From IMG/VR virus record IMGVR_UViG_3300042359_000853, positions 163,584 to 227,583 of that record: DNA of 64,000 nucleotides, one strand, 5' to 3'. Below the pieces are notes generated by a model. That model saw only the letters and a list, made by a program, of their open reading frames with translations, was not told the DNA's origin and did not search any database. The first letter of the stretch is position 1; each line of letters begins with the position of its first letter. Position numbers and translations under genes: made by a program. Of this stretch, positions 26,115-51,849 are shown piece after piece.

Positions 26115-26188
26115 TTTTTTATTTTTTTTTGTTTTATATATTCCTTAAAAAACCATACTTTTTACAGAGGTGGATTTTTTATTGAATA

Positions 26189-28318: not shown

Positions 28319-28347
28319 GAAGGCTTTTTTTTGTTTATATATTAATT

Positions 28348-28396: not shown

Positions 28397-30103
28397 CTAC
28401 TTATTCAAGATCCATTTTCTGTTACCACAATTCCAAACTCTTGAGTATCCAAGTTCTTGTGTTATTTGCTCTTCTGTTTTGTTTGGATCAGCTCCTTTTT
28501 TTACAAGTAAGTGTTTTCTATAGTTGAAACGATGTTTTCTAATACCATTAACAACATACCAATATCCGGGTTGTGATTGTCCTGAATAGTCAAAACCCAA
28601 TGTTTCGTATAGTTCTCCCTGAGAAATCATATTATCTGAGTAGGTTTGTATCTGTATCCAAGAATAGTTGTTTTTAAAGTGTTTTAGTAATTTTGAGGCA
28701 CTTCCTGGACAACTAACATAATTTTTGTTACAAAATCTAGTTAGTTCCCATATACCTTCACCACCTTTTCTAGAAATAGGTAATCTTATTTTGGAAAAAC
28801 ACATAAGTGATATTAGTTCGCCTTCATAATACAATCCTAATCTTACAGAAGATTTACAATCTCCTTGTAAATGATTATCTTCTAAGAATTTTTTTGATTC
28901 TAGATAGAGAACTTCTCTTATCTGACATTTTCTAGCCCAAATACGAGTAGTTGGTCTTTTCAACTTGTTTAAAATGAAAGATTTCACGATATCTTGTTTG
29001 GTCAAATAATCATCTTCCCATATAGTATAAAGTTTTATTCCTAGTTTTTCACACACTTTCATTTTTTCTAGATGATAATCTTTGGACTTGAATCTAGATG
29101 AGTGCCAAAAAACTCCATTAAATTCAAATGCAATTTTAAGATCTGGTAGATAAAAATCAAGCTCTTTGGGATATATTACTGATTTATCATTCATAAGAAC
29201 TTCGCCATCAAAATTTTCCTGAAATATTTTTAACAATTCTTCTTGTTTTAGTGAGATAGTCTCACCTATAGGATGGCATATAGTGCATATAGGTGTTGAA
29301 TTTTTTACTCTTGTATAGAACTGATAGGTTAAAATATTGAAATTCTTAAAACACTTATTACAACCAAAATGTAGCGAAGTAGTATCTGTATCTTTATCAA
29401 ATCCAAGAAAAGTATAGTCTGATGGATTTATTTTTTCTTCAATTCTATCTCTATAGTTTTTGTAAAACTCGAAGATTGTTTTTTTATGAACTTCTGGATT
29501 AGACCAGGGGTGTTCTGTACCCCATCTTTCTATAGACGTTTTTTTATAGGATTCTTTCCAGATCTGGATGTTTTCTTTGAAACTTTCAACTCTTTTATCT
29601 AATATATCTCTATTCTTTGATGGATTATCAACTCCCCAATTTTTGATAAGTGTTTCTTTTGATTTATTTTTAACCACATCACTAGACATAGGTGAATTAC
29701 CGCCCCATTTGGTTTGATTAGTTTGTATTATCTTGTTCCGAATGGTCGGGGATTCACTTGGTGTTTTAGTTCCCCATTTTTCAAGTGAATTATTTATTTT
29801 TTTATTTTTTACATTAGGATCAGAAGAAATACATTTTGTAGAACAATATGAAATATATCCTAGAGTTGAATTTTTATATTTTGTAAAATTCTTACAATCA
29901 TCTCTTTTACATTTTGGTTGAGTAGTAATTCCGTGATATGATAAGTAAACCTTTTCTTTGAACGGTAAGTCATTCAATCCATTTTCTTTGCAAAAATTTA
30001 AGATAGCTAAATAATGATCCGGATAGTGATATTTGACATAAGATTCTTTTGACATCTTACCTGAACTATCATTTTTTAATAAGTTGCCTAAATCTTCTAA
30101 CAT
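28397..30103 (-). CDS. Free-standing Hef-like homing endonuclease (second copy)
   Basis: KWG repeats, CNKC/CTIC zinc motifs, LDFYLPDLKIAFEFNGVFWHS, IWEDDY, ARKCQI...NHLQG. Confidence 0.75.
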   Translation of the reverse strand: MLEDLGNLLKNDSSGKMSKESYVKYHYPDHYLAILNFCKENGLNDLPFKEKVYLSYHGITTQPKCKRDDCKNFTKYKNSTLGYISYCSTKCISSDPNVKNKKINNSLEKWGTKTPSESPTIRNKIIQTNQTKWGGNSPMSSDVVKNKSKETLIKNWGVDNPSKNRDILDKRVESFKENIQIWKESYKKTSIERWGTEHPWSNPEVHKKTIFEFYKNYRDRIEEKINPSDYTFLGFDKDTDTTSLHFGCNKCFKNFNILTYQFYTRVKNSTPICTICHPIGETISLKQEELLKIFQENFDGEVLMNDKSVIYPKELDFYLPDLKIAFEFNGVFWHSSRFKSKDYHLEKMKVCEKLGIKLYTIWEDDYLTKQDIVKSFILNKLKRPTTRIWARKCQIREVLYLESKKFLEDNHLQGDCKSSVRLGLYYEGELISLMCFSKIRLPISRKGGEGIWELTRFCNKNYVSCPGSASKLLKHFKNNYSWIQIQTYSDNMISQGELYETLGFDYSGQSQPGYWYVVNGIRKHRFNYRKHLLVKKGADPNKTEEQITQELGYSRVWNCGNRKWILNK

Positions 30104-33913: not shown

Positions 33914-33971
33914 ATTTTTTTATTTATTTTGATACTATATATATTTATTTAAAAGTGATTTTTTACACTTT

Positions 33972-34826
33972 TTAGGATAGTAGAGCGAAATACTCTTTAA
34001 AATGTTTCAAACGATCCGCAAGACCGATTGTTCCACCATTTACTCTTTTCGTTACCGCAGTTACTGTCGCTTCATCACTACCTTTATCACAAATAGCCCA
34101 GAGTTTGTTAGAGTCAAAGAAAAAAGCTGCTGATGCTAGAGGATATTTACTAGCTACAAGATCAGGATTGGCAACTGTATCTTCACCTATAAACTTAGCA
34201 AAATTAGTATAGTTCGATTTACCGGTGAGTTGGATATAACCACGACCTCTAAACTTATAACCTTCTTTTGTAGATTCGTCACCATTACCCATACGACCAC
34301 CGTATACTTTAGATGCTATTTTTTCTGGATTTTTAGCGTAAGAATCAGCAGTGGTGCCAGGGAAATATTTTGGAAATATCTTTTTAAGACCATCAGCTGA
34401 GTAATTGAGATTTTCTTGGATGTGCTTGAATCCACCAGATTCATGACCACACTGTGCTAGAAAATGAGCTAAACGAAGTGGTGTAGTAATATTGAATTTC
34501 TTAGCAGTGTCAGGTATTTGAGCTATTACGGCATCAGGAATATGACCTTTTAGTTTTTCAAGTTTGAACGTAGAATCTGTTGGAAATACGACATCTTCTT
34601 TGATTGGTTTTGCTGCGGCCGGTGCTGTAGGTGCAGTAGTTGCTGCTGGAAACATTTTCGCCCAAGTTCCATCACCAACAATACCATCTGCTGTAAGTCC
34701 GTTAGCTGCTTGCCACTCTTTTACTTTCTTTTCAGTTCCAGGACCGAATACTCCATCAGCAGCCAATCCTAATTTTTGTTGAAGTTTTTTTACTTCTTCA
34801 CCTTTTGAATTTAATTTAATGACCAT
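33972..34826 (-). CDS. Endolysin: peptidoglycan-binding domain + GH19 lysozyme
   Basis: GEEVKKLQQKLG..ADG.FGPGTE..VK.WQ...GL.ADGIVG (PG_binding_1); AHFLAQCGHESGGF, FRGRGYIQLTGK.NY, VNGG.IGLADR. Confidence 0.92.
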   Translation of the reverse strand: MVIKLNSKGEEVKKLQQKLGLAADGVFGPGTEKKVKEWQAANGLTADGIVGDGTWAKMFPAATTAPTAPAAAKPIKEDVVFPTDSTFKLEKLKGHIPDAVIAQIPDTAKKFNITTPLRLAHFLAQCGHESGGFKHIQENLNYSADGLKKIFPKYFPGTTADSYAKNPEKIASKVYGGRMGNGDESTKEGYKFRGRGYIQLTGKSNYTNFAKFIGEDTVANPDLVASKYPLASAAFFFDSNKLWAICDKGSDEATVTAVTKRVNGGTIGLADRLKHFKEYFALLS

Positions 34827-34872
34827 AGTTTTTTATTTTTTTTTTTTAGGATATATATAAAATCAAAAATTA

Positions 34873-35274
34873 TTATTTTTTCATGGCGTTTTCAAGTGAC
34901 TGACGAAGAGCTGAAGAAAACTCAGTTCTCTCGAAAGGAAGTTTTTCATCTTGAAGTTGAAGTAAGGTTGAGGATACAGAAGTTTTGTTTGATCCTTCAC
35001 CGATATACTCTTTGCCGTCGATAATAATTTTTGTTTTAACAATCGTTTTCTTTTGCTTGAACTCGAAAGGTCCGATACGAATACCTTTTGTTGGTGCTTC
35101 GATTGAAAGTATTTCTACGTTAATAGCTCTGCCGCTATCACATAAGGTATATCTATCGTTAGCAAGTTCCGTAACGATTTGTTTTGCTCCGTAGGTTAGT
35201 TTTGTATCTTGGACACCGTTCATGTGAGCGAGTGTTATAACACTCGCTATAAAGTAACAAATAATTGAATCCAT
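34873..35274 (-). CDS. Small CsgG-fold-like protein (reduced paralogue of the 39603 gene)
   Basis: Visual similarity to the CsgG ORF: GAKQIVTEL/GVSNRIVENL, KQKKTIV/KKTNTTIM, GEGSNKT/GQGQST, FERTEFSSALRQSLENA/FDQSTVGIATQKALEVA. Confidence 0.45.
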   Translation of the reverse strand: MDSIICYFIASVITLAHMNGVQDTKLTYGAKQIVTELANDRYTLCDSGRAINVEILSIEAPTKGIRIGPFEFKQKKTIVKTKIIIDGKEYIGEGSNKTSVSSTLLQLQDEKLPFERTEFSSALRQSLENAMKK

Positions 35275-35335
35275 TTTTAATTTCTAGATTTTATCTTGAA
35301 ATTTTTAATTTCAAGTATAGTTATATATCTAGAAA

Positions 35336-36505
35336 TTAATCTTGAATTTTAGAAGCAGTTGTTGTAGTTCTGTGTTTACCTTTTGAAACTATCCATATTA
35401 GTGAAGTATTCTCAAAGGTTCTAGTATGACTCAGAGGTCTTGTCAGGTAGTAATTTGGTAAAGTAGAGTTTTGTTCTATATCGAGTTTTTCGGCGTTGGA
35501 AAACACTAGATTTTGATTTAATGTTGAATTATTCCAAAATATATTCCAAGCAGATTTAATATCAAAATAATTTGTTGTAGAGTCTGAGGTTATATCACAA
35601 GTGTAAAAATCCCAACTTCTCATCTCTGATGGAAAAGTTTTCATAAAGAGTAAATAATTCAGTTCTGATTCTATTATTGTGTTAGAGTATTGTGAACTAT
35701 TTATTGTAGCTCTGAACGTATAGTTTTGTGGATTAGAAAATGAAGAATTACCCTGCGTATTTGTAAGAATAGTTCCTTGTGGTATCCAAGTTGAACTCTG
35801 AACGAAAGGCGTAAAAAGGACGGAGGAGTTAGAGGTTCCGCTCCAATTTGAACCATTCCTTCCTGGTGTGGTGATTATTTGAGAGTTATCACTATTTGAA
35901 ATACCCTGTAATGAAGATAGAGAAGCGCAACCAGGGTGCGAGAGTAGATTTATTCTTACAGTGTTGGTAGTTTCTGATAATACTATTTGAAAATCAGTAA
36001 AGAGAGTAGTAGTTGTTCTACAATTATAATATCCAATGTGATAACTTACTATAAATCTTCTATTTGGTTGTGATCCGGTAGTTTGGTATCTAACAAAATA
36101 TCCGGATATCGGAAAGAGATCCATAGCGTTTGCGTGTATTCCGTTTCTTACTGTATTATTTGGAGAACCACCAACGATATCACCACCCGTATTGGTAAAT
36201 GAAATCCATCCGTTAGAGCAGATATTTACAGTTGTAAAATTAGTTCCCCAGTAATTGAAAGTAAAACCAATTGGTAGATTTGATATAGTCTGGTCATCAC
36301 CGAGAGTAAGTGAAGTTCCTGATGTTGATTCATAAGCATATGGAACAGATCCTTGTGTGTATCCAGTCTGACCTGGAACAAAATGTTCAACCGTTACTGG
36401 AATTCCCTGTGGTATTCTACCATCAATAGTAGAAATAGTAATAACTTGGCCAAATACAACACTTGATAAAAAGAGAAAATACGTAACAATTCTAAATATT
36501 TTCAT
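35336..36505 (-). CDS. Secreted protein with nidogen-like domain and degenerate dockerin-like tail
   Basis: Signal peptide MKIFRIVTYFLFLSSVVFGQ (start moved to 36505); LGDD....LPIGFTFNYWG..FT.VNICSNGWISF; CDITSDSTTNYFD. Confidence 0.6.
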   Translation of the reverse strand: MKIFRIVTYFLFLSSVVFGQVITISTIDGRIPQGIPVTVEHFVPGQTGYTQGSVPYAYESTSGTSLTLGDDQTISNLPIGFTFNYWGTNFTTVNICSNGWISFTNTGGDIVGGSPNNTVRNGIHANAMDLFPISGYFVRYQTTGSQPNRRFIVSYHIGYYNCRTTTTLFTDFQIVLSETTNTVRINLLSHPGCASLSSLQGISNSDNSQIITTPGRNGSNWSGTSNSSVLFTPFVQSSTWIPQGTILTNTQGNSSFSNPQNYTFRATINSSQYSNTIIESELNYLLFMKTFPSEMRSWDFYTCDITSDSTTNYFDIKSAWNIFWNNSTLNQNLVFSNAEKLDIEQNSTLPNYYLTRPLSHTRTFENTSLIWIVSKGKHRTTTTASKIQD

Positions 36506-36543
36506 TTTAATATATATAAACAAAAAAATAAAAGTCCAAAAAA

Positions 36544-36969
36544 ATGAAACTTATAAAAAAATTTGAAGAGTTTTCACCAGGTGAAAGTTGGGATAATCTT
36601 TCTAAAAAAAGGGGCAGAAAATTAGATCATTTAGTAGGTCAAACACTTAATTTTAATATCATAACTTATCGCACTGAGGATTTCACCAAAGACGAATTAG
36701 AATATAAAAGAAAAACTAACTATGTCGGCACTATAAAACAAGTTCTAGATTGGGATATTTACGAAGAGCCAAAACTTGTTATTGAGTTACCGGAAAGAAC
36801 ATACAAAATAGGATATAACAAAGCAAAAGATATCTTCTACATAAGTAGATACTATCTAGCTAATCAAATTTTAGGAAAACGAGATGTTGATAAAAATATT
36901 TTAGAAGAGTTTAAACAATTTTTCTATAGTCAACTTTTCGATCTTGACAAACAATACAGAGATCAATAA
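36544..36969 (+). CDS. Hypothetical protein (MKLIKKFEEF N-terminus) interrupting the minus-strand envelope cassette
   Basis: ORF with its own AATATATA element. Confidence 0.7.
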   Translation: MKLIKKFEEFSPGESWDNLSKKRGRKLDHLVGQTLNFNIITYRTEDFTKDELEYKRKTNYVGTIKQVLDWDIYEEPKLVIELPERTYKIGYNKAKDIFYISRYYLANQILGKRDVDKNILEEFKQFFYSQLFDLDKQYRDQ

Positions 36970-38117
36970 ACTAAATTCTGTTGATTAGTAAAACCCGGTG
37001 TTAGTAAATAAAAATTTGACACACCACCATTTGTAGGTGTAAAAGTGTAAGTAGATTGAATACCAGGTATCGTATTTCTTAGATCTCCAGTGCTAGAAAT
37101 AAGAGTATTCCACTGAGTTTGTGTGAAAAGAAGTGTTCTTTTTTGATAGGATAATCCACCTATTCTTCTTGATGTTAAATAAATATCACCAATAGTTATA
37201 CTATTATCACCCGTAATCTCGTATTTATGGAAATGGATAGAACGTAATGGTATTCTTTGTAAAACAATACTATCAATACCTAAAAAATCAGAACTTGTTA
37301 GATTTGACAAAGTTGTCGGTATAGTCACTTCTACAGACCATTCATCACCAATTAGTCCTGTTGAAGAAAGAGAATATTGACCAGAACTATTTGTTTGTGA
37401 AGTTGATTGTAAAGTCCAAGAGCCAGGTGATGAAGTTGGAATACCAATTTCCGAAGTTTGTAGAGAGTGAGTTGATTGACCGGGTCTTCTCCAAACAACA
37501 CTAAGACCATCACCTCCGGCATACTCCTGCATTCTAGCTCGAAAGGTGTATTGAACACCACTTGTTAAGTTAATATTTCCATAAATTGGACCACTCATTC
37601 CGTGACCACCGTAATAACTAACTACAAAATTTCCACCAATAAATAGATCAGATCCATCATCTGAGTTGATACCAAAAGAATATTGACCACTTGTTTGTGG
37701 TATAAATGTTCCAGTAACCTCAACTGAATAATACTCTCCGTTATTAGGGACTGTGGCTCCTGCGTTTCTGATTGTTGTGAAAGTCGTAAAATTTAGGCAA
37801 GTAGTAGTAGGTAGTGTTCCAGTCCATCTAAGTTGTGTATTTGAAAAACTAGTATTGAATAGTCGATCGAATTCAGATGTTACTGTAGGATATGCTCCGT
37901 ATTGTGAGGTATTTCCATTTCCCAAGTGTGTTGAGTATATTTTCACGTTCATCGTATTAGATAAAACTATAGTAGGTGTTCTTCTGAACAACTTTGTGAT
38001 AATATTCTGAACAGGAGCATCGCCTTCAGTTCTAATAAAACCTGAATGTGTAAAACTTTGCCCTTGAGTCGATAGAGATAAAAAAATAAGTAGTAGTGGA
38101 AATATAACTTTTTTCAT
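36963..38117 (-). CDS. Secreted PA14-domain protein with dockerin-like tail
   Basis: Signal peptide ending QGQ; PA14 pattern TG.FIP..SG.YSFG..SDDGS.L.IGG..V...G.HG...G.I.L.SG..Y.....E..GG..L.V.W; YEITGDNSITIGDIY. Confidence 0.8.
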   Translation of the reverse strand: MKKVIFPLLLIFLSLSTQGQSFTHSGFIRTEGDAPVQNIITKLFRRTPTIVLSNTMNVKIYSTHLGNGNTSQYGAYPTVTSEFDRLFNTSFSNTQLRWTGTLPTTTCLNFTTFTTIRNAGATVPNNGEYYSVEVTGTFIPQTSGQYSFGINSDDGSDLFIGGNFVVSYYGGHGMSGPIYGNINLTSGVQYTFRARMQEYAGGDGLSVVWRRPGQSTHSLQTSEIGIPTSSPGSWTLQSTSQTNSSGQYSLSSTGLIGDEWSVEVTIPTTLSNLTSSDFLGIDSIVLQRIPLRSIHFHKYEITGDNSITIGDIYLTSRRIGGLSYQKRTLLFTQTQWNTLISSTGDLRNTIPGIQSTYTFTPTNGGVSNFYLLTPGFTNQQNLVY

Positions 38118-39613
38118 AATAGAATTTTAGTTCCTGTCAGGACTTGCCAGTTTAAAAATGACTGATTTACTTGATAAACACCAGAAAAACTAATAGTCCA
38201 TTTAAACTTAGAAGTTACTTTCATATCTGTATTTATCATAGGAATGAACAATAAACCACTCTGATACCACTGACCTTGGTAATAATAGGTGTAGGGTGAA
38301 TAAACACCAAGACCTAAAAAATTAATTCCAAGAGATCTACCACCCTTGAAATTAGTAAAACCACCACCCATCAATGCCCAGTTTCTAAAATCTTGATCTG
38401 ATAATTTTCCGGTCGTGAAGGTAGTGCCTGCCATTAGTGTTACTTTATTAACTTTCTGAGCGTTGAGTAGTGAGGCTGTTAAAAACCAATCGTTGTTAAA
38501 ATTAGTCATATAAGATGTCGAAAAAATACCCATATAGTTTTTCATCTTCAAAGAACCATAACCGGACAAATTAAGAATATTCTGACCTGTCTGGTAGTTG
38601 ATATTTAGACCTTTGATGAAGGTTTGTTCAGTATTTACATGTGTTAGTGATGTGTTGAAACGGAAGTTATCATTACCTGTTTTGGTGATATCAGAATCAT
38701 TTCTAATAACAACTATATCACCTGTAGCAATGAGAGCACCAGAAGCAACACGTGATGAACCTCGAGATGATTTACCACCACCAGAAGATCCCCCACCATC
38801 ACTACCTCCACTTTCACCACCACTAGAAACTTGTTGGTTTTGTTCTCCCAGTGCGGTTACGCCACCAGATTCGGAATTATTTTCTGTAGAACTACCGTTT
38901 TGAGTTGAACCACCTCGCTGATTTGACCCACCACCCCCTCCTGTGTTGTTACCGGGAGCAGAACCATTTCCGGTTCCACCAGTTCCACTACCTGATCCAG
39001 AACCACCACCAGAACCAGATCCACCAGTATTTGAACCAGATCCACCAGTATTTGAACCAGATGCACCTGAGTTGTTTCCTGAACCATCACCAGCATTACC
39101 ACCACTGCCACCTGAGTTGTTTCCCGAACCACCACTAGATGATCCTGAAGAGTTTGAGTTAGATCCATTACCGTTTTGACCTGTAGTTCCTCCAGTTGTG
39201 CCGGATCCGATACCACCGACCGAATTTCCTATCGAGCTAGCCATCGATACAACAGAAGTAAGAGATGCTACATTGTTAGCAGATACACTTCCCAAAAAAT
39301 TACTTAAATTCGTAGATGCTCCAGAAGCTGCTTGACCTCTTTCTGAAGCACACGGATCAGTTCCTGGTGGGAGAGAACTTATAATTCCCTCTCTCCATCT
39401 CTCAAGTTCACCATTTTCCATTTCAGCCTGAGTGAAAGTTCTGAATCTTCCTAAAAAATTAATTGTTACAGAACCACCTATGGGTATTTGAATAGTTTCA
39501 TTTCTTTGTAAACAACTATTATAATAAGTATAGGTGAAACTTTGAGCTTTTACACTCAAAATTCCACCTATACAAAGTGTTAAAATAAACGATAATAAAA
39601 ATTTACCAACCAT
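38114..39613 (-). CDS. Secreted Gly/Ser/Asn-rich protein with C-terminal predicted outer-membrane beta-barrel
   Basis: Signal peptide ending VKAQ; ~150-aa GSGN-rich linker; C-terminal ~200 aa of alternating hydrophobic/aromatic strands. Confidence 0.6.
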   Translation of the reverse strand: MVGKFLLSFILTLCIGGILSVKAQSFTYTYYNSCLQRNETIQIPIGGSVTINFLGRFRTFTQAEMENGELERWREGIISSLPPGTDPCASERGQAASGASTNLSNFLGSVSANNVASLTSVVSMASSIGNSVGGIGSGTTGGTTGQNGNGSNSNSSGSSSGGSGNNSGGSGGNAGDGSGNNSGASGSNTGGSGSNTGGSGSGGGSGSGSGTGGTGNGSAPGNNTGGGGGSNQRGGSTQNGSSTENNSESGGVTALGEQNQQVSSGGESGGSDGGGSSGGGKSSRGSSRVASGALIATGDIVVIRNDSDITKTGNDNFRFNTSLTHVNTEQTFIKGLNINYQTGQNILNLSGYGSLKMKNYMGIFSTSYMTNFNNDWFLTASLLNAQKVNKVTLMAGTTFTTGKLSDQDFRNWALMGGGFTNFKGGRSLGINFLGLGVYSPYTYYYQGQWYQSGLLFIPMINTDMKVTSKFKWTISFSGVYQVNQSFLNWQVLTGTKILL

Positions 39614-40295
39614 TTTGCTCCAGACGCTTTACTAGGTTCATTGTAGCAACCTCCAAAGCTTTCTGAGTAGCAATACCAACAGTTGATTGGTCAAATCCCA
39701 TTTCTGGGTTCTTAAAGTAACCTTCACCGAATTGTGTAGATTGACCTTGACCAGAAGCAACGATATATTGTGAATTTTCTACATTAACTAAACGAATCTG
39801 AATACCCATAATAGTAGTATTGGTTTTCTTCAACTTACCTTTATCGTAGTTTTCTGAGTATGATACAGAAAAATCATAAATCTCTGCGTAAACGATATAT
39901 TTTGGTAAGCGAATACCCTGCATTTTTAGTTTAGTTTTACCATCGTCAAGACCGTCGATTTTCTTTTCCCAGGCGTCGAGCATTTGATTGACTACGGCGT
40001 CTTTTTCTTCGGTAAATTCAAAACGATTGGTATATAATAGATTTTCTACAATACGGTTAGATACACCAAGACCTAGTCTTTTTTCCCTAAGTTCAGGAAA
40101 AGTTTCCCAGAGTTCTTTGTTGACATTCAATTTTGAAAGCTGCACGGTTTGTTTTTTACCCGTGTAGGTTGAGATAGATTCTAGTGTTCTATCAGTTTTT
40201 TCAAAATCCGCTTGATATTGTGTGGTCGAAATACTAGATTTACAACCAACTACCATCAAGAAACTTAGTGAGAGAATCGATAACCAGTTTTTCAT
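39603..40295 (-). CDS. CsgG/HfaB-family outer-membrane lipoprotein
   Basis: Lipobox VVGC; LGVSNRIVENLLYTNRFEFTEE, IVYAEIYDFSV, IQIRLVNVENSQY..ASGQG. Confidence 0.75.
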   Translation of the reverse strand: MKNWLSILSLSFLMVVGCKSSISTTQYQADFEKTDRTLESISTYTGKKQTVQLSKLNVNKELWETFPELREKRLGLGVSNRIVENLLYTNRFEFTEEKDAVVNQMLDAWEKKIDGLDDGKTKLKMQGIRLPKYIVYAEIYDFSVSYSENYDKGKLKKTNTTIMGIQIRLVNVENSQYIVASGQGQSTQFGEGYFKNPEMGFDQSTVGIATQKALEVATMNLVKRLEQNGW

Positions 40296-40696
40296 TCTTC
40301 TCCCTCCTGTTCTTGTTGTTTTTGTCTGAGTCTTTTCATTCTCTCGGCTGGTGTTTCTTTCTTTTCCTCAGCAGGCGCAGCGGCTGGCTGAGCCTGTGGT
40401 TGAGATGCTGGCGCTACTTCTCTGATAGTTTCTTTCTCTCTGATGACGGTCGTTCCACCACCTCCAGAGTTACTCGATGCGTTGTTTTGGTTGTTGTTTT
40501 CCAAGTTGAGATTTATAACCGGAGCAGCCGCTGGTGCTACTTGTTCAGTTTTTGTCTCTTCACTGTCGTTTCCACCACCTCCGAAGAGAGTAGTAGAAAT
40601 CCATACACCACCACCTGTTACCACAGTTGCTAGTGTGCCTACGATGGTCTTTTTCAATCCACCCCAGGTTCCGTCATTTTCGGTTTCTTCTGCCAT
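40292..40696 (-). CDS. Membrane-anchored hypothetical protein
   Basis: One hydrophobic Gly-rich segment (residues ~17-38), then an APVINLNLENNN and APA-rich tail; 4-nt overlap with the CsgG-like gene. Confidence 0.65.
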   Translation of the reverse strand: MAEETENDGTWGGLKKTIVGTLATVVTGGGVWISTTLFGGGGNDSEETKTEQVAPAAAPVINLNLENNNQNNASSNSGGGGTTVIREKETIREVAPASQPQAQPAAAPAEEKKETPAERMKRLRQKQQEQEGEE

Positions 40697-40715
40697 AGTT
40701 TTTTTTTGTTTTTTT

Positions 40716-42617
40716 TTATTTTTTAATAAACTTATATATTTTTTGTTTTGTTCCTGTAGTTAATCTAACAAAATATAAGCCTGGCTTAAGAGTATTTGTT
40801 TCAATTCTTCTAGTGACGGTCTGATCTTGTGCTACAAACTGTGTTTCAGCGCTGTGTAGTTTTCCAGATAGATCGTAGATTTCTGAAGTTAGATTGTCTG
40901 GTGTTGTTTGAAAATAATCTACATACATTTCATCTACAACTGGGTTTGGATACACTCTGAAACCATTTACAAGTTGATCTACAAGATCTCTAGCTCTTCT
41001 ACCGTTTACGATTGTAGCATCGGTTGGTGAAGGAATGATATTCAAATCTTGTGCTTTATCACTACCAGCTGCTTTATTGATTATTTGTATAGGTGATTCT
41101 TCCCAGTTATTGTTTAGGATTTCAAATTTGAAGTTAAACATCTGAGTTGGATTAGTGATTAGAGAAGGTGACATTTTTGATTCGTGACCACCCCATAGAA
41201 TTTCACCTGTTTTCGATGAGATAAATGAGTTCCAAGCACTTGCCTCTTGTCCTACATTAACACCTACAAATTTAAAGATTTGAGGATTGTATTTTAGACC
41301 GATTTGAGAAGCACCTACTTTGTTACCATGTGTAATAAGTGTTACATTAACATCAACGGTATTATCACCAGAAATAGTAAGTTTAGGTATTCTAAACTGA
41401 ACTGAATCTTTGATGTTTTGGTAGATCATACCTTGATCAAGAACATAAGATGTTCCAGATGTGCCGGTGTTAAGTCTTTGTATTTGAAAAGAAACGTTAT
41501 TAAGACCCGTTCCAGTAACGTCACCAAGAACATATCCAAGATAAGTCATTGAGCTCATACCATTAAGTAAGAGATCTACGAGAGTTGTTCCGATGATCGA
41601 GGTTTGAAAAGTGTTAGGGTTTGTTATTATTGCATCAAATTCTGCCTGAGTATAATATCTAACATTGTATTCGTTAGCAACAACTGGTGACCAAGTCGTT
41701 CTTCCGGTAGCTAGACGATTAAATATAAGATACGCGTCAGAAACCGAAATTGAACCACTTCTGTTTACGTCAGCTTGTTGAAACTCATAAGATTGTGCTG
41801 TGTCAGCATAAATACTCATATCAGAAAGACGATAAGCATCTGTGATATTGATAGCTGAGTTATCAGAAAGTGTATCTAAATTTGATACTAATTTCACGTC
41901 ATAGAAAGAAGTATCGTAAGGTATTTTGATACCAGCAATACCAAAGGTGTTGGTAGTGAATCTTTGACCTCTTTGATAAGCTTGTGCTGACTTTAGTTTA
42001 TAGTCAAAGGCAAATGGCATTCCACTTGCAGGAGTTCCATCAACATTTAATACCGATACTGGTATTAAAAGAGTATCCATCTGAAATCTACCACCAAGAT
42101 TGTAAGTTCCTAGTGTGTTATCAATACCACTTGTAGTTGTAGCGATATTGTTGTAGGTTGGTGTTCCAGTGACTCTAAGTGAGTCTACAGATGAAGGATT
42201 GAAACCAACATTATGTGGAAGTAAAACCTCGAATACTGCGCCATCTGGCCAATCAAAAACAGCCGAAGATCCGGTGTAGATGGCTGTTGCATTTACCCAA
42301 CCTGGTTGTGAATAATAAGAACCATATTTGGTGGATATCGATGTTGTTGTAGGCCCCCATTTAACAATTGGTTGTTTGAATGAAGCCTGTGGATAAAAAA
42401 ATCTAACCTGAAAACCAGCATAGTTTGTAAGGGTTGGATTGTGATAGTGAAGATAAACTTTAGTAGTATCTTGAAGAATACTACCAAGTGTAAACACAGT
42501 GTCGATAATAAAGTGTGGAGAAGATGAGTTTGGTGATATCAAAACTTCATTTCTACCATTTTGGCCGAACGCATTGAGCGTTATTAGGGCAAAAAGCCCT
42601 ACAAGAAACTTTTTCAT
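40716..42617 (-). CDS. T9SS-sorted protein: cohesin-like + dockerin + cohesin + Por C-terminal domain
   Basis: Signal peptide ending AFGQ; ADVNRSGSISVSDAY dockerin/EF-hand-like motif; GASQIGLKYNP..F.F.GV cohesin-like motif; FRVYPNPV...IYDLSGK...LKPGLYFVRL....YKFIKK type-A CTD. Confidence 0.85.
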   Translation of the reverse strand: MKKFLVGLFALITLNAFGQNGRNEVLISPNSSSPHFIIDTVFTLGSILQDTTKVYLHYHNPTLTNYAGFQVRFFYPQASFKQPIVKWGPTTTSISTKYGSYYSQPGWVNATAIYTGSSAVFDWPDGAVFEVLLPHNVGFNPSSVDSLRVTGTPTYNNIATTTSGIDNTLGTYNLGGRFQMDTLLIPVSVLNVDGTPASGMPFAFDYKLKSAQAYQRGQRFTTNTFGIAGIKIPYDTSFYDVKLVSNLDTLSDNSAINITDAYRLSDMSIYADTAQSYEFQQADVNRSGSISVSDAYLIFNRLATGRTTWSPVVANEYNVRYYTQAEFDAIITNPNTFQTSIIGTTLVDLLLNGMSSMTYLGYVLGDVTGTGLNNVSFQIQRLNTGTSGTSYVLDQGMIYQNIKDSVQFRIPKLTISGDNTVDVNVTLITHGNKVGASQIGLKYNPQIFKFVGVNVGQEASAWNSFISSKTGEILWGGHESKMSPSLITNPTQMFNFKFEILNNNWEESPIQIINKAAGSDKAQDLNIIPSPTDATIVNGRRARDLVDQLVNGFRVYPNPVVDEMYVDYFQTTPDNLTSEIYDLSGKLHSAETQFVAQDQTVTRRIETNTLKPGLYFVRLTTGTKQKIYKFIKK

Positions 42618-42622
42618 GGCTA

Positions 42623-42973
42623 TTATTCTTCAGTATTTCCAGATGAGAGAGACACTCCGTCTTCTTCATCCATCTTTTGAACAAGCATTTTATCTCTGTC
42701 TTCATTTGAGAACCAGAAATCAATTACTTTGTTCAAATTACCTACGAACGCACCTAAAAGAATAAGTAAAAGTTCTTTCCAGGCTTCAGCAATTGTAGCT
42801 TTGAATAGTACGGCCATTACTATACCAAAGATTATAAAGAAAAATGTTGATAGAATAATCAAAGTGATTTTCCATCTGTTAGACTGCATAGTTTGCAGCA
42901 TGAAGTTAAACCGTTCATCCGGCTCAACTTTTTGATACTCCGTGTTGTAGAGTAGTTTTGTAAGTAGTCCCAT
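42623..42973 (-). CDS. Two-TM membrane protein, possibly holin-like
   Basis: Two hydrophobic helices (ITLIILSTFFFIIFGIVMAVLF; ELLLILLGAFVGNL) and an acidic C-terminus. Confidence 0.5.
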   Translation of the reverse strand: MGLLTKLLYNTEYQKVEPDERFNFMLQTMQSNRWKITLIILSTFFFIIFGIVMAVLFKATIAEAWKELLLILLGAFVGNLNKVIDFWFSNEDRDKMLVQKMDEEDGVSLSSGNTEE

Positions 42974-43041
42974 AACTTATTTTTTTTTATTTTTATATAT
43001 TAAAACAAAAAAATGGGTTTTTTTACGAAAAACTCGGTTTT

Positions 43042-43598: not shown

Positions 43599-46184
43599 TT
43601 ATATTTCAATTACATCCAATCTGCCAGTATTTGATGGATTTGAATCATCAGTAATCTCTAACATAAAACTCTTAAAACTTTTACCCGTGGATTCTACTTC
43701 TCTTTCATAGAAATTTTGGTAAGTTTCTAAATCTATTGTTGATAATCTTTGATTTGGTGCACTTAAGAATTTATTATTTTGATCATAAAGTGCTGATAGT
43801 TGAATATTAGCCTCTCCTTCTTTACCATCTCCTTCGGGATCTTTTCTTCCAGAATAAAGTTGTGGATTTATTTTAACTTTTTGATAATGAACAGATCTAA
43901 AAGGAGATTCATTTATATCACAATAGAATATCCAAATTATACCATTTTTTTCGTACAAATATCCATAGTATATGTTAGGGTCAAGTTGTGTAACATCACT
44001 CCAATCTGTGTATCCAGTATAACTCGATCTATTATCTTCATAAAATTTATTTGCAGATAATGGAGTCTTAAAAGTTATTTTGACAGGATAAAACTTTATC
44101 GACACACCACCTGATTTTGTTTCAACTTTATCTACTAATGATGTATCAAGAAAATTAACATAAATAGGAACATTACTTCCTGATTTATTTTGTAGAATAT
44201 TACCGTAAGAAGTATTTTGTATTTCTGATTCCTCTTGTTGTGATATAGGATCTTTAGTAGTTGGGATGCACCACATGAATCTTTGTGTTGTTAGCGATGG
44301 TTTTACGTTCCAATATAAAAAATTTTGATTTGTATCACTGTTTTTACTCTTGTCGGCGGAATATCTCAAATCGGGTAATTTTTCTTGAATTTCTTGTCCA
44401 AAATATTTACGAGTGGCTTCGTCTATTAAATCTTCACCTCTACATTTTGATGGGGTTGCTAAATCTTGAAGTAAGTTGAACAATACTGGTCCCATCTTGC
44501 CCTTCCCTTGAATTTTTGGTGTTGATGAGTCCTGATTTTCCAATAATAATTTCCATTTGTATGAATCATTGAATTTATCCTCTGCTCCTGGATAATCAAA
44601 GTTTATATTTGCAAATATCTTCCTTAATTTTTGGTCTTGAAGTAGTCGATTTACGAAAGTCTGAAACTTTCTATAGACGATCTTTTTTGCCCAAGGTCCG
44701 AAATCAGGAATTACAGCTTCTCCACCCGCATCTTTTAGTGTAGAACTAGCGTCTCTACCTTTAGATGGACCACCTCCCAATTTTTCATATTCTTGAAAAG
44801 TTTTCATCGAAACTCTACCACCTGGTCTACCCGAAGGTATATAATCTGTTGCAAATAATCTATATGCTACTGTTAATAAGTTAAATAGTCTTACCATAGC
44901 ATCCGAAGCTATTTGATAGTCGAGTGTGAATGTTCCAGCGGAAAGTTGATTCTCTAGTTCTTCTAGTTCTCTTTCATCATCTCTAGTAAGTCTGAAAGCT
45001 GTTAAATTTTTCTCATTTACCATAGAATATTCATAATGAAAATTCTCATTGATGCCTGCTTTTGGGAAATAACTTTTCCAAATATTAGCAATTGTTTCCG
45101 GTTTTAGTGTTGTTGTTGAGGTTGTTATTGTTGGCGTTGGAACTGGTGTTGTAGTAGTTGATGTTGTAATACTCTGTGTTGTAGTTGATGTATTTGTTTG
45201 CGTTACAGTTGAAGTATTTGTTTGAGTTACAGTTGAGGTATTTGTTTGAGTTACAGTTGAGGTATTTGTTTGCGTTACAGCTGGTGTAGAAGTATTGGTT
45301 TGTGTAACAACTGGTGTTGTTTTTATATTTTTTTTATTATATGAAGTAGAACCAAAACCTATTTTTCCCCTACCGTAATCCGTATTTTTAATACCTATTT
45401 GAGATTTTGTTTTTATTTCTTCTAATAATAATCTATATTCTTCAAATTCAGAAAATTTACGGAAAATTCCTTTATTTAGTGATTCATTTTTTACAGAAAT
45501 TTCTTTTCTCAATACTTCGTCTGAATCAGACACAACAGTTCTCTCTTTCCACTGTTGTTTTCTAGCATTATCGCCTCCTAGATCTCTAGTTGGATTACAT
45601 TTTTTCCATCTAAATCTTCTAAGTTCGATAGCGAAATCCGAGTGAATATCTCTCAAATCATTCAATTCTTCTCTTTTGAAAAGTTTTTTTAGTTCTTCTA
45701 AAGTTTCTAATTCTAGTAATAAATCACCAATTAGTGAGCCTGGTGGTAGGTCTTTCCATTTATCTGTTATATCTTTATTGGAAATAAATTTAGCATCTGA
45801 TGAATCGATGCCAATTAATAATTTTAGCTTTGTGTCATCTGTGCCCGTGCCATCACAATCTACGTCTTCTTTCCAATCAGGTAGAGCATCATTTGTTGTT
45901 AAGCAAACATCTTTTATTTTAGCAACGTGATTTTTTATTCTTAGTCGATACAACTTTACTCTCAAATCTTTATTCATACTTTCTCTGAGAATCTCATAGA
46001 TAGTATTTTCTATTTCTTGTAAAACCCCATCCATCCTCATAGAATCATATTGAAGTTTTAATTTTCTCAAAGTTGAGTTTATTAGCCTTCCAAATAAAGA
46101 ACCACCCCAAGTTACTTCATTTTTGAATACTTCATTCATTTTATCTTTTTGTAAAAAAGTATCTCTTTTAAGAATATATCTCAT
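43599..46184 (-). CDS. Large hypothetical protein with Thr-rich repeat linker; putative head protein
   Basis: 861-aa ORF; repeated xNE/LLE sites and a KFSEF motif. Confidence 0.75.
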   Translation of the reverse strand: MRYILKRDTFLQKDKMNEVFKNEVTWGGSLFGRLINSTLRKLKLQYDSMRMDGVLQEIENTIYEILRESMNKDLRVKLYRLRIKNHVAKIKDVCLTTNDALPDWKEDVDCDGTGTDDTKLKLLIGIDSSDAKFISNKDITDKWKDLPPGSLIGDLLLELETLEELKKLFKREELNDLRDIHSDFAIELRRFRWKKCNPTRDLGGDNARKQQWKERTVVSDSDEVLRKEISVKNESLNKGIFRKFSEFEEYRLLLEEIKTKSQIGIKNTDYGRGKIGFGSTSYNKKNIKTTPVVTQTNTSTPAVTQTNTSTVTQTNTSTVTQTNTSTVTQTNTSTTTQSITTSTTTTPVPTPTITTSTTTLKPETIANIWKSYFPKAGINENFHYEYSMVNEKNLTAFRLTRDDERELEELENQLSAGTFTLDYQIASDAMVRLFNLLTVAYRLFATDYIPSGRPGGRVSMKTFQEYEKLGGGPSKGRDASSTLKDAGGEAVIPDFGPWAKKIVYRKFQTFVNRLLQDQKLRKIFANINFDYPGAEDKFNDSYKWKLLLENQDSSTPKIQGKGKMGPVLFNLLQDLATPSKCRGEDLIDEATRKYFGQEIQEKLPDLRYSADKSKNSDTNQNFLYWNVKPSLTTQRFMWCIPTTKDPISQQEESEIQNTSYGNILQNKSGSNVPIYVNFLDTSLVDKVETKSGGVSIKFYPVKITFKTPLSANKFYEDNRSSYTGYTDWSDVTQLDPNIYYGYLYEKNGIIWIFYCDINESPFRSVHYQKVKINPQLYSGRKDPEGDGKEGEANIQLSALYDQNNKFLSAPNQRLSTIDLETYQNFYEREVESTGKSFKSFMLEITDDSNPSNTGRLDVIEI
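45190..45315 (-). repeat. About five 24-nt coding repeats (VTQTNTST)
   Basis: gtatttgtttg(a/c)gttacagttga(a/g) tandem units. Confidence 0.85.
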
Positions 46185-51411: not shown

Positions 51412-51849
51412 ATGAACGAACAAGATAACTCAAAAAAAGAAGCTCTCTGGAAGATTCATCTTATCTATCTACTTATTATTATTCTTTTAGGTGGATGGAT
51501 AGTTTATACTCAAATCAAATCAGAAGAAACCAATCCAGAAAATAAAAAACTACACGAGGAGATTCAAAAACTCGAAGATCAAAGAGATTCACTTAGAACT
51601 GAAAGAGAAGGATTAAGGTCTAGAATACTAGGTATTGAATCTGATATCGAAAAGAAAGAACTCGAAATCAAAATAGTTAAGCAAAAAGTAGCTTCTCTTG
51701 AGGGAAAATTGACTTCGGCGACAACAGATTTAAAAAACTCCGATAAAAAAGTTTCTCAAGTAAGATCTGAAATTCAAAACCTTGAAAAAAATATACCTCT
51801 TAAAGAAGGAGATGATCTTCTAAACTCATTAAAAGATAAATACAAATGA
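51412..51849 (+). CDS. N-terminal TM + coiled-coil protein (possibly spanin-like)
   Basis: IHLIYLLIIILLGGWIVY TM segment followed by long heptads. Confidence 0.5.
   Translation: MNEQDNSKKEALWKIHLIYLLIIILLGGWIVYTQIKSEETNPENKKLHEEIQKLEDQRDSLRTEREGLRSRILGIESDIEKKELEIKIVKQKVASLEGKLTSATTDLKNSDKKVSQVRSEIQNLEKNIPLKEGDDLLNSLKDKYK

What the first reader, a model, noticed from the sequence alone, without database searches (positions are those of the whole stretch)
34873..42973. Phage-encoded cell-envelope cassette: T9SS cohesin-dockerin scaffold, dockerin-tailed lectin-like subunits, CsgG pore and Gly-rich beta-barrel
Seen: eight minus-strand genes between a 2-TM gene and the GH19 endolysin; most carry Sec signal peptides, a lipobox or a TM segment, so the products should enter the host envelope rather than the cytoplasmic virion pathway. 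Established: type-A CTDs (YPNP...GLYFVR) route proteins through the Bacteroidota T9SS; cohesin-dockerin pairs assemble surface complexes; CsgG/HfaB form outer-membrane secretion or anchoring pores; csgG has been reported in some marine myophages. Inference: the phage builds an adhesive or shielding surface complex on infected cells, for aggregation, superinfection exclusion or grazer avoidance. I do not know of a described phage system combining these parts.
Basis: partly seen in the sequence, partly recalled or inferred. Interest (0 to 1): 0.88.

Follow-up and report, generated by a model that had tools for sequence, protein, structure and literature searches.

The report
Phage-borne cell-surface lectin display cassette
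A large phage of Bacteroidota carries a conserved block of genes for secreted and outer-membrane proteins that probably builds a sugar-binding complex on the infected cell; no paper found here describes such a cassette, its role is untested, and it is common in aquatic metagenomes.

Summary
Between a 2-TM gene and a PG_binding_1/GH19 endolysin lie eight minus-strand genes. Five have Sec signal peptides, one of them with a lipobox. These five are 5 of the 7 signal-bearing genes among 65 in the window.

Most domain calls survive testing.
- g7: signal peptide, sub-threshold dockerin, cohesin and a T9SS type-A CTD.
- g3: PA14 plus a C-terminal "dockerin-X" module homologous to g7's. g2 matches that module only weakly.
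- g5: a lipoprotein with a CsgG fold. Pfam CsgG does not hit it, but a 41%-identical bacterial homologue passes Pfam's CsgG threshold.
- g4: a small hypervariable Cys domain, a Gly/Ser linker and a C-terminal outer-membrane beta-barrel.
- g1: a small paralogue of g5.

The gene order is kept in 63 viral contigs down to 26-40% identity, and in the cultured Flavobacterium phage immuto. There the scaffold is split into a dockerin protein and a cohesin+CTD anchor. The cassette is nearly absent from 185,579 cellular genomes, so it is a phage module and not a captured host operon.

Its function is inferred: a T9SS-anchored cohesin-dockerin lectin complex on infected cells, for adhesion or receptor masking. 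Frequent linkage to lysis genes keeps a lysis-related role open.

The parts
42623..42973 (-). g8: 116-aa inner-membrane protein with 2 TM segments and a charged C-terminus. Holin-like or a cassette component.
   Evidence: TM segments at about residues 33 and 68. 61-70% identical even in loci where g7 is only 26-29% identical. Its position moves within the cassette. It is mostly complementary to a second 2-TM family, 'h82', that sits next to the endolysin in other loci. No Pfam holin family hit.
40716..42617 (-). g7: scaffold protein, 633 aa. Signal peptide, conserved N-domain, dockerin-X module, cohesin, T9SS type-A CTD.
   Evidence: Por_Secre_tail 43.5 bits (cut-off 27), Cohesin 28.4 (24.1), Dockerin_1 19.3 (22.9). 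TIGR04183 48.7 bits. In 18 homologues: CTD 18/18, cohesin 17/18, dockerin 6/18. PNP, G and GxY motifs are invariant. The profile hits solved T9SS CTD chains 8glj_D and 8glk_D.
40719..40955 (-). g7 residues 555-633: T9SS type-A C-terminal sorting domain.
41016..41396 (-). g7 residues 408-534: cohesin domain.
   Evidence: Weak profile hit to cohesin 3ul4.
41712..41864 (-). g7 residues 252-302: dockerin-like pair of Ca-loop repeats, the start of the 'dockerin-X' module (about residues 245-370).
   Evidence: Dockerin_1 below threshold. D260, A261, D283, N285 and D294 are invariant. An HMM of this segment finds the tails of the lectin subunits.
40292..40696 (-). g6: 134-aa protein with a conserved Gly/Thr-rich hydrophobic segment near the N-terminus and a low-complexity charged remainder. 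Probably anchored in the inner membrane.
   Evidence: Translation. Directly upstream of g5 in most loci, with a 4-nt overlap here; in some loci g8 lies between them. No family hits.
39603..40295 (-). g5: lipoprotein of the short CsgG/HfaB type, 230 aa.
   Evidence: Lipobox VVGC. AF2 model pLDDT 65, pTM 0.62. Foldseek top hits are CsgG 4uv2, 6l7a and 4uv3: E 4e-8, TM about 0.55, 216-230 columns. A viral CsgG is the top hit in BFVD. Bacterial homologue L076, 41% identical, passes Pfam CsgG at 28.6 bits against 20.8; its relatives are named CsgG/HfaB family protein.
38114..39613 (-). g4: outer-membrane protein, 499 aa. Signal peptide, small two-Cys N-domain, Gly/Ser/Asn linker, C-terminal beta-barrel.
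   Evidence: Alignments A2/A3: C34 and C88 invariant; the linker is almost entirely deleted in L004 and L011. AF2: 13 predicted strands in residues 293-497, pLDDT mostly 65-85 through residue 440 and 45-66 after it; residues 93-289 disordered. Foldseek finds only outer-membrane barrels, e.g. KdgM, NanC, NalP, intimin, FapF, PgaA.
38123..38737 (-). g4 residues 293-497: beta-barrel domain, an orphan family.
   Evidence: A profile search of 1.84 billion representatives gives only 83 hits; nearly all carry the match at their C-terminal end and many are short, partial proteins. None of the seven hits scanned matched a known Pfam barrel family.
39338..39541 (-). g4 residues 25-92: hypervariable N-terminal Cys domain.
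   Evidence: Only 48-49% identical in relatives whose g5 is 99-100% and whose barrel is 91-92% identical.
36963..38117 (-). g3: secreted lectin-like subunit. PA14 domain (37464-37742) plus C-terminal dockerin-X module (36993-37301).
   Evidence: PA14 42.9 bits, cut-off 24. The dockerin-X HMM built from g7 matches residues 273-375, E 1.3e-4; orthologues reach 2.6e-17. Orthologues swap the lectin part for Lectin_C, Laminin_G_3 or Ig_7.
35336..36505 (-). g2: second secreted subunit with an unknown N-domain and a degenerate dockerin-like tail.
   Evidence: Signal peptide. Dockerin HMM E 0.088 at residues 293-311; relatives in other loci matched by both g2 and g3 reach 2e-5. The start is set at the ATG because an ATATATA box lies 12 nt upstream of it.
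34873..35274 (-). g1: small paralogue of g5 (CsgG-fold family). No signal peptide in this phage.
   Evidence: hhalign g1 against g5: probability 53%, E 1.4e-4. The g1 HMM hits g5-like proteins at 2e-7 to 8e-9. g1 against the gene after or near the bacterial CsgG-like gene: probability 95.6% and 89.5%. Distant orthologues carry signal peptides.
33972..34826 (-). Endolysin (PG_binding_1 + GH19). A neighbour, often linked to the cassette.
   Evidence: An endolysin lies within 6.5 kb of g5 in 36 of 46 loci with enough flank.
42994..43000 (-). ATATATA promoter-like box upstream of g8. Further boxes at 40733-40739 (before g6), 36511-36517 (g2), 35322-35328 (g1) and 34852-34858 (endolysin).
   Evidence: The same box lies 12-54 nt upstream of portal, MCP, protease, sheath, TerL and others. 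54 of 72 occurrences lie within 80 nt upstream of a same-strand start.

Best explanation
The cassette is a conserved, phage-specific envelope module. It is driven by the phage's own promoter-like boxes and places a multi-protein, sugar-binding complex on the outer membrane of an infected Bacteroidota cell.

Shown:
- g7 has a Sec signal, a cohesin and a T9SS type-A CTD.
- g3 and its relatives pair interchangeable lectin domains (PA14, C-type lectin, LamG, Ig) with the same dockerin-X module found in g7. g2 has only a weak match to that module.
- g5 and g1 are paralogues of a short CsgG/HfaB family.
- g4 ends in an outer-membrane beta-barrel.

Inferred mechanism:
1. g7 crosses the inner membrane by Sec and the outer membrane by the host T9SS, and stays on the surface through its CTD.
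2. Its cohesin captures the dockerin-X tails of the lectin subunits, and possibly of other g7 molecules, giving chains.
3. g5, g1 and g4 form the outer-membrane export or anchoring part for subunits that lack a CTD. g4 holds out its hypervariable N-domain on a Gly-rich tether.
4. g6 and g8 are inner-membrane partners.

The likeliest purpose is binding to surface glycans around the time of release. The complex would either stick neighbouring host cells to the infected cell or coat the cell's own glycans.
For: - Domain calls.
- Dockerin-X homology between g7 and the lectin tails.
- Natural split in the cultured Flavobacterium phage immuto. gp015 is signal peptide + cohesin + CTD. gp014 is N-domain + dockerin-X. 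gp013 is C-type lectin + dockerin-X. This is what an assembly between separate proteins predicts.
- CsgG fold and family.
- g1-g5 paralogy, and a cellular operon of CsgG-like gene, OMP-like gene and second CsgG-like gene.
- Barrel.
- Gene order kept across 63 viral loci down to 26-40% identity.
- At least 6,255 protein clusters for g5 in metagenomes, against 6 MAG contigs in 185,579 genomes.
- The likely exposed parts evolve fastest: g4 N-domain 48-49% and g3/g2 71-86% identical where g5 is 99-100%.
- Lectin domains differ between lineages.
- Signal peptides are clustered.
- Shared promoter-like boxes.
Against: - No binding, localisation or expression was tested.
- The g7 dockerin is below Pfam's threshold, and the match in g2 is weak (E 0.088).
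- Pfam CsgG does not hit g5 itself. Its lipobox Cys is missing in several lineages. It is about 50 residues shorter than E. coli CsgG, so the transmembrane hairpins and a pore are unproven.
- g1 has no signal peptide in this phage.
- The route by which CTD-less lectins would reach the surface is a guess.
- Structure models are of moderate confidence only (pLDDT 65 and 55).
- Frequent adjacency to holin-like and endolysin genes could point to a lysis role instead.
Confidence: 0.5

Rival explanations
1. Lysis accessory. The CsgG-like lipoprotein, the barrel and the inner-membrane proteins g6 and g8 belong to the lysis programme. They would breach or permeabilise the outer membrane, or time lysis, alongside the neighbouring endolysin.
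For: - An endolysin lies within 6.5 kb of g5 in 36 of 46 loci, and a 2-TM holin-like gene (g8 or h82) in 39 of 46.
- Variant cassettes in L077 and L079 also sit next to an endolysin.
- g6 (membrane segment) is directly followed by g5 (lipoprotein), the order seen in spanin pairs.
- A lysis-timing role was proposed for phage CsgGF in Melnitz (PMC9004378).
Against: - A T9SS-exported cohesin scaffold and interchangeable lectins have no obvious part in lysis.
- g5 is far larger than o-spanins, and g6 shows a low-complexity rather than a coiled-coil periplasmic part.
- The window holds a separate spanin-like pair at 51412-52343.
- Seven loci in three distinct versions (L022/23, L028, L029/33/34/45) show no endolysin or holin-like match in the ±10 kb fetched, and immuto's endolysin lies about 8 kb away.
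Confidence: 0.2
2. Superinfection exclusion or receptor masking. The lectins and the g4 N-domain coat or block the surface structures that related phages, or the phage's own progeny, bind. This would protect the infected cell or keep progeny from sticking to debris.
For: - The likely exposed parts are hypervariable between close relatives, as expected for parts that track variable surface receptors.
- Lectin domains are swapped between lineages.
- From paper titles only: Flavobacterium phage resistance maps to gliding and T9SS genes (PMC9804748, listed).
Against: - No similarity to any PADLOC defence model.
- No paralogy between the lectins and other window proteins such as fibres.
- The cassette shares its promoter-like box with the virion genes, whereas classic exclusion genes act early. 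The box's timing class is not known, however.
Confidence: 0.15
3. Virion parts. The genes encode tail fibres, baseplate or decoration proteins, given their place between the sheath and other structural genes.
For: The cassette lies between the sheath and endolysin genes and large unknown genes near TerL in this window. Lectin-like, fast-evolving domains resemble receptor-binding proteins.
Against: - Signal peptides are conserved across g7, g4, g3 and g2 and their orthologues; g5 keeps a lipobox in this phage's clade; g7 carries a T9SS CTD and g4 an outer-membrane barrel.
- The sheath neighbourhood is kept only in the closest relatives.
- In immuto the cassette lies among replication and nucleotide-metabolism genes.
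- No PHROG structural family matches.
Confidence: 0.04
4. An inert, recently captured host operon.
For: g5 and g1 have cellular relatives in a CsgG/HfaB-type operon.
Against: - Gene order is conserved at 26-40% identity across viral loci.
- Only 6 hits in 185,579 genomes. Only L076 and L081 were seen in a cellular gene context, and they hold the CsgG-like genes alone.
- ORFs are intact and tightly packed behind phage promoter-like boxes.
Confidence: 0.02

Closest known systems
Curli-like csgG/csgF clusters of pelagimyophages and OM43 phage Melnitz (PMC7029224, PMC9004378)
   Same: Large aquatic myophages carry a CsgG-type outer-membrane lipoprotein in a small operon with unknown secreted partners. 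The function is unknown; 'sibling capture', uptake and lysis timing have been proposed.
   Different: Those clusters match CsgG and CsgF directly and were placed phylogenetically nearest Alphaproteobacteria curli proteins (PMC7029224). Here CsgF, CsgE, CsgA and CsgB are absent. g5 belongs to a short CsgG/HfaB subfamily that Pfam misses. The cassette adds a T9SS cohesin scaffold, dockerin-tailed lectins and a barrel protein.
CsgG (curli, type VIII secretion) and HfaB (Caulobacter holdfast anchor)
   Same: Fold: CsgG is the top Foldseek hit, E 4e-8, TM about 0.55. A lipobox is present. Family membership follows by transitivity through a bacterial homologue.
   Different: No direct HMM match. g5 is about 50 residues shorter. 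The lipobox is lost in some lineages. No amyloid subunit genes. The nonameric pore is untested.
Cohesin-dockerin scaffoldins of cellulosomes, and non-cellulosomal cohesin/dockerin modules
   Same: One cohesin-bearing anchor protein and several subunits share a dockerin-like tail with D-x-N-x-S/D Ca-loop motifs. The split scaffold in immuto mirrors anchor plus subunits.
   Different: The cargo is lectin-like, not enzymatic. Anchoring is by T9SS CTD, not SLH or sortase. The dockerin is sub-threshold and fused to a conserved extra 'X' segment. The system is encoded by a phage.
T9SS type-A cargo of Bacteroidota, e.g. the surface adhesins of Flavobacterium johnsoniae (own knowledge)
   Same: N-terminal Sec signal plus a C-terminal Por_Secre_tail domain with conserved motifs. 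Adhesin-like content.
   Different: The gene is phage-borne and would depend wholly on the host's secretion machine. No T9SS component is encoded nearby.
Classical autotransporters (type Va) and FapF-type amyloid channels
   Same: g4 has an N-terminal small domain, a long flexible linker and a C-terminal outer-membrane barrel (13 predicted strands). NalP, EspP and FapF are among the fold hits.
   Different: No Pfam Autotransporter or Fap match. No confident helix before the barrel. The barrel family is an orphan, with 83 representatives.
Two-component spanins and holins of phage lysis cassettes
   Same: A membrane protein directly followed by a lipoprotein, a 2-TM protein with a charged tail, and a neighbouring endolysin.
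   Different: Sizes, folds and the low-complexity periplasmic part do not fit spanins. No holin family match.

Membership tests
T9SS type-A cargo (g7) | C-terminal sorting domain matching Por_Secre_tail / TIGR04183 above the curated cut-off | tested here: met
   43.5 bits against 27, and 48.7 against 23. Found in 18 of 18 homologues. The profile hits solved CTD chains 8glj_D and 8glk_D.
T9SS type-A cargo (g7) | N-terminal Sec signal peptide | tested here: met
   A hydrophobic N-terminus ending AFGQ, conserved in all homologues. Judged by a sequence rule, not a trained predictor.
T9SS type-A cargo (g7) | Export and surface attachment that depend on the host T9SS | not testable with these tools
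   The host phylum is inferred from the cultured relative on Flavobacterium sp. LMO8.
Cohesin (PF00963) | HMM match above the gathering score | tested here: met
   28.4 against 24.1 bits. Found in 17 of 18 homologues, best E 9.5e-14. Immuto gp015 scores 36.7 bits.
Cohesin-dockerin system | Ca-dependent binding of dockerin to cohesin | not testable with these tools
   Only indirect support: a shared dockerin-X module on several subunits and the split scaffold in immuto.
Dockerin type I (PF00404) | HMM match above the gathering score | tested here: not met
   g7 scores 19.3 against 22.9 bits. 6 of 18 homologues match at E no better than 4e-4. g3 and g2 have no Pfam hit.
Dockerin type I (PF00404) | Two Ca-binding loop-helix repeats | tested here: inconclusive
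   The second repeat, D-V-N-x-S-x-x-I-S-x-S-D-A-Y, is well conserved. The first is reduced to I-T-D-A-Y.
CsgG/HfaB family (PF03783), g5 | HMM match above the gathering score | tested here: not met
   No hit for g5 or for 16 phage homologues even at E 10. Met only by transitivity: L076, 41% identical, scores 28.6 against 20.8 bits.
CsgG/HfaB family (PF03783), g5 | CsgG fold | tested here: met
   Foldseek top 19 hits are all CsgG, E 4e-8, probability 1.0, TM about 0.55 over 216-230 columns. The model has pLDDT of only 65.
CsgG/HfaB family (PF03783), g5 | Lipoprotein signal | tested here: inconclusive
   VVGC is present here and in most of the clade. The Cys is absent in L056, L059, immuto, L079 and L080.
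CsgG/HfaB family (PF03783), g5 | Oligomeric channel with transmembrane hairpins | not tested
   Needs multimer modelling or experiment. The long hairpin at residues 133-171 has a polar tip.
Curli (type VIII) system | CsgA/CsgB amyloid subunits and CsgE/CsgF accessory proteins | tested here: not met
   No Pfam or NCBIfam match in any cassette protein.
Outer-membrane beta-barrel (g4 C-terminus) | Closed antiparallel barrel fold | tested here: met
   13 predicted strands in residues 293-497. The Foldseek hits listed are almost all outer-membrane barrels, with TM up to 0.60 against KdgM.
Outer-membrane beta-barrel (g4 C-terminus) | C-terminal aromatic beta-signal residue | tested here: not met
   It ends in ..KILL in nearly all homologues. 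Only immuto ends in F.
Classical autotransporter | Match to the autotransporter beta-domain family | tested here: not met
   No Pfam hit for 17 homologues at E 1. Only the architecture is alike.
Two-component spanin (g6/g5) | Type II inner-membrane protein with a coiled-coil periplasmic domain, plus a small outer-membrane lipoprotein | tested here: not met
   Gene order fits. However, g6 is low-complexity and g5 is a 230-aa CsgG-fold protein.
Holin (g8) | Small protein with TM segments and a charged C-terminus, next to an endolysin | tested here: inconclusive
   Its topology and linkage fit. No holin family match. It is unusually conserved.
PA14 (g3) | HMM match above the gathering score | tested here: met
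   42.9 against 24 bits.

The most novel reading that the evidence does not exclude
A widespread group of large aquatic Bacteroidota phages uses the host's type IX secretion system to plant a cohesin anchor on the infected cell. On that anchor it assembles, cellulosome-style, a set of fast-evolving lectins, helped by a phage-owned outer-membrane unit of a CsgG-like protein and a barrel. This makes the dying cell sticky for neighbouring hosts, or masks its receptors. It would be a virus-built extracellular organelle.
Probability: 0.4. Interest if true: 0.85.

Novelty: new variant of a known kind. Interest (0 to 1): 0.72.

Why it matters
Phages are known to carry single envelope genes such as exclusion lipoproteins. 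Some marine myophages carry an unexplained csgG/csgF cluster. This cassette is larger, with seven to eight co-ordered genes for exported proteins, and it has a legible logic: an anchor, plug-in lectins and an outer-membrane unit.

It is very common: at least 6,255 protein clusters for one component in public metagenomes.

If the model is right, three things follow.
- A virus can route its own cargo through the host T9SS.
- Cohesin-dockerin assembly is used outside polysaccharide degradation.
- Infected cells change their surface in a way that could affect aggregation, particle attachment and phage transmission in lakes and seas.

The cassette also occurs in a cultured phage-host pair, Flavobacterium sp. 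LMO8 and phage immuto. The open question of what phage CsgG-type clusters do therefore becomes testable at the bench.

Tried and rejected
- Megablast of the cassette against the phage collection: no match.
- PHROGs and NCBIfam gave nothing for the unknown genes.
- Pfam CsgG on g5 and 16 homologues at E 10: no hit.
- PDB sequence profiles for g5, g4 and g1: only noise.
- Tested whether the g4 barrel is homologous to the middle gene of the cellular CsgG-like operon. Profile-profile probability was 3%, so only the architecture is alike.
- Looked for a link from the g4 barrel to PorP/SprF, autotransporter or other known barrels. The full-library profile search gave 83 hits; the seven scanned matched no known barrel family.
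- Looked for paralogues of the lectins among other window proteins, such as fibres: none.
- PADLOC defence models: none.
- Literature searches for a phage T9SS, cohesin or dockerin cassette found nothing relevant.
- The virion-part and captured-host-operon readings were rejected for the reasons given under the rival explanations.
It was rerun without that row.
The N-domains of g7 and g2, and g1, g6 and g8, were therefore not modelled.

Full report
**1. What is there**

The window is a myovirus-type phage. It has a portal, a major capsid protein, a prohead protease, a 1,239-aa sheath and TerL. It also encodes a tmRNA. It is identical to part of a 227,583-bp IMG/VR contig.

From 42973 down to 34873, eight minus-strand ORFs (g8 to g1) end just before a PG_binding_1/GH19 endolysin. 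g8 to g3 are packed with 4-11-nt overlaps or gaps of 19 nt or less. A 440-nt gap between g3 and g2 holds a conserved plus-strand ORF.

A simple N-terminal hydrophobicity rule flags 7 of 65 window genes. Five of the seven are g7, g5, g4, g3 and g2, and g8 has two TM segments. The hypergeometric P is 1.3e-4.

**2. The parts**

*g7* passes the curated thresholds for the T9SS type-A sorting domain and for cohesin. It has a sub-threshold dockerin. Across 18 homologues the CTD is found in 18, the cohesin in 17 and the dockerin in 6. The PNP, G and GxY motifs of the CTD and the Asp/Asn positions of the dockerin loops are invariant. The family profile hits solved T9SS CTD chains.

*g3* carries a PA14 domain. 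An HMM built from g7 residues 245-405 matches the last 105 or so residues of g3-type proteins, with E from 2.6e-17 to 1.3e-4. The window's g3 matches at residues 273-375. The window's g2 gave no hit below E 1 with this HMM, and only E 0.088 with the shorter dockerin HMM. The g3-type subunits thus share a "dockerin-X" tail with the scaffold. The part in front of the tail differs between lineages: PA14, C-type lectin + LamG, or Ig_7 + C-type lectin.

*g5* has a lipobox. Its model (pLDDT 65) has CsgG as its best structural match: E 4e-8, TM about 0.55, near full length. PelC, GNA1162, LptE and LpoB follow. In the viral structure library the top hit is a phage protein named CsgG. Pfam's CsgG model misses g5. 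It does accept a 41%-identical bacterial homologue, whose relatives are named CsgG/HfaB family proteins.

*g1* is a small paralogue of g5. It matches the gene that follows, or lies one gene beyond, the cellular CsgG-like gene.

*g4* has four parts: a signal peptide, a roughly 70-aa domain with two invariant Cys, a Gly/Ser/Asn linker of very variable length, and about 205 residues modelled as 13 beta-strands. Those strands match only outer-membrane barrels. A full-library profile search finds only 83 representatives. Nearly all carry the match at their C-terminal end, and none of the seven scanned matched a known barrel family.

*g6* has a conserved Gly/Thr-rich hydrophobic segment. *g8* has two TM segments and a charged tail.

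**3. Distribution**

g5 retrieves 63 viral loci. The order g7-g6-g5-g4-lectin(s)-g1 holds down to 26-40% identity. Flanking genes change and g8 moves about.

The g5 family has at least 6,255 clusters in metagenome proteins, all unnamed. Among 185,579 species genomes only six MAG contigs hit. L078 carries the whole cassette, L077 and L079 a variant of it, and L080 is a 2.7-kb fragment with g5 and g6. L076 and L081 lie in a cellular gene context and hold only a CsgG-like gene with a second CsgG-like gene beside it.

Cellular relatives sit in a three-gene unit: a short CsgG-like gene, a secreted OMP-like protein with a small Cys domain that ends in F, and a second CsgG-like gene. This mirrors g5, g4 and g1 in architecture. 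Homology of the middle gene to g4 was not detected.

The cultured Flavobacterium phage immuto (160 kb) carries the cassette among replication genes. Its scaffold is split into gp014 (N-domain + dockerin-X) and gp015 (signal peptide + cohesin + CTD), next to gp013 (C-type lectin + dockerin-X).

**4. Regulation and evolution**

An ATATATA box lies 12-54 nt upstream of g8, g6, g2, g1 and the endolysin. The same box precedes the portal, capsid, protease, sheath and TerL genes. 54 of 72 occurrences lie within 80 nt upstream of a same-strand start. This suggests phage-controlled transcription, but the timing class is not known.

In the closest relatives g5 is 99-100% and the g4 barrel 91-92% identical. 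The g4 N-domain is only 48-49% identical and g3/g2 are 71-86%. That pattern is expected for exposed, ligand-facing parts.

**5. Interpretation**

The best reading is a phage-built surface complex. It would consist of a T9SS-exported cohesin anchor, dockerin-X-tailed lectins, and an outer-membrane unit made of CsgG-like proteins and a barrel. The split scaffold in immuto is the strongest indirect support for assembly between separate proteins. Purpose (adhesion or masking), pore formation and the export route of CTD-less subunits are all inferences.

A lysis-linked role stays open. An endolysin lies within 6.5 kb of g5 in 36 of 46 loci, and a 2-TM gene in 39 of 46. Against it, the lectin-scaffold part does not fit lysis, one group of loci lacks the linkage, and the window has a separate spanin-like pair at 51412-52343.

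The virion-part and captured-operon readings are poorly supported.

**6. Comparison and novelty**

Phage csgG/csgF clusters are described in pelagimyophages and in phage Melnitz, with unknown function. No paper in the searched library describes a phage cassette with a T9SS cargo, cohesin-dockerin parts and lectins. In GenBank the immuto genes are only labelled hypothetical, cohesin-domain or C-type-lectin-domain proteins.

I rate this a new variant of a known kind: phage-encoded envelope or secretion clusters. It is of high interest because it is abundant, has a clear architecture and can be tested in culture.

Noticed in passing
window 9171-9520 (-): Phage-encoded tmRNA. ARAGORN gives a tag peptide, and Rfam RF00023 scores 65.3 bits against a gathering score of 47.
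   Followed up: partly
window 51412-51849 (+) and 51846-52343 (+): Two overlapping genes just after TerL. The first has an N-terminal TM segment plus a coiled coil, like an i-spanin. The second has a signal peptide, a coiled coil and a C-terminal TM segment, with no lipobox Cys. They are a candidate spanin-like pair, far from the endolysin.
   Followed up: partly
window 22847-24364 (-) and 28397-30103 (-): Two large HNH homing-endonuclease genes (phrog_3339, E about 1e-117). Together they bracket the capsid and protease genes.
   Followed up: no
window-wide, e.g. 26135-26141, 28336-28342, 33936-33944, 42994-43000: An ATATATA box lies almost only in intergenic DNA, 12-54 nt before start codons on either strand. 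In several cases a GC-poor hairpin with a T-run precedes it. It is a likely phage promoter element, with terminators.
   Followed up: partly
window 36544-36969 (+): A 141-aa ORF on the opposite strand sits inside the cassette, between g3 and g2. It is conserved in L002 (98%) and L007 (82%). It has no family match.
   Followed up: partly
window 43599-46184 (-): An 861-aa protein with a tandem Thr-rich repeat (VTQTNTST units). It shares phrog_15511 with the 575-aa protein at 59379-61106.
   Followed up: no
window 24456-26114 (-): The major capsid protein is 54-69% identical to those of uncultured 634-735-kb phages (LR745206, LR756501-LR756504). It is about 30% identical to Lak megaphages and Tenacibaculum phage PTm1. 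tblastn of g5, g7 and g4 finds none of those records, only phage immuto.
   Followed up: partly
L082 6001-8275; L076 9980-11283; L081 2368-3722: A cellular unit in FCB-group and other bacteria, of unknown function: a short CsgG/HfaB-like lipoprotein, a secreted OMP-like protein with a two-Cys N-domain, and a second CsgG-like protein.
   Followed up: partly
L035 14534-14776, L049 14062-14310, L018 7333-7581: An 80-82-aa 2-TM protein family ('h82') lies directly before the endolysin in L035 and L049, and just upstream of g7 in L018. These loci lack g8, and the family is a likely holin.
   Followed up: partly
L054 13924-16530: In the most divergent lineage, further signal-peptide proteins follow the cassette. 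One is a DUF481 outer-membrane barrel at 15787-16530.
   Followed up: no
L077 5915-11951; L079 4033-7763: A variant cassette. The g7-like protein has no CTD hit and ends in ..GYNNF; L077's copy has a weak cohesin match. An extra small lipoprotein is present. In L077 a 139-aa OMP-like protein takes the place of g4. An endolysin is again adjacent.
   Followed up: partly
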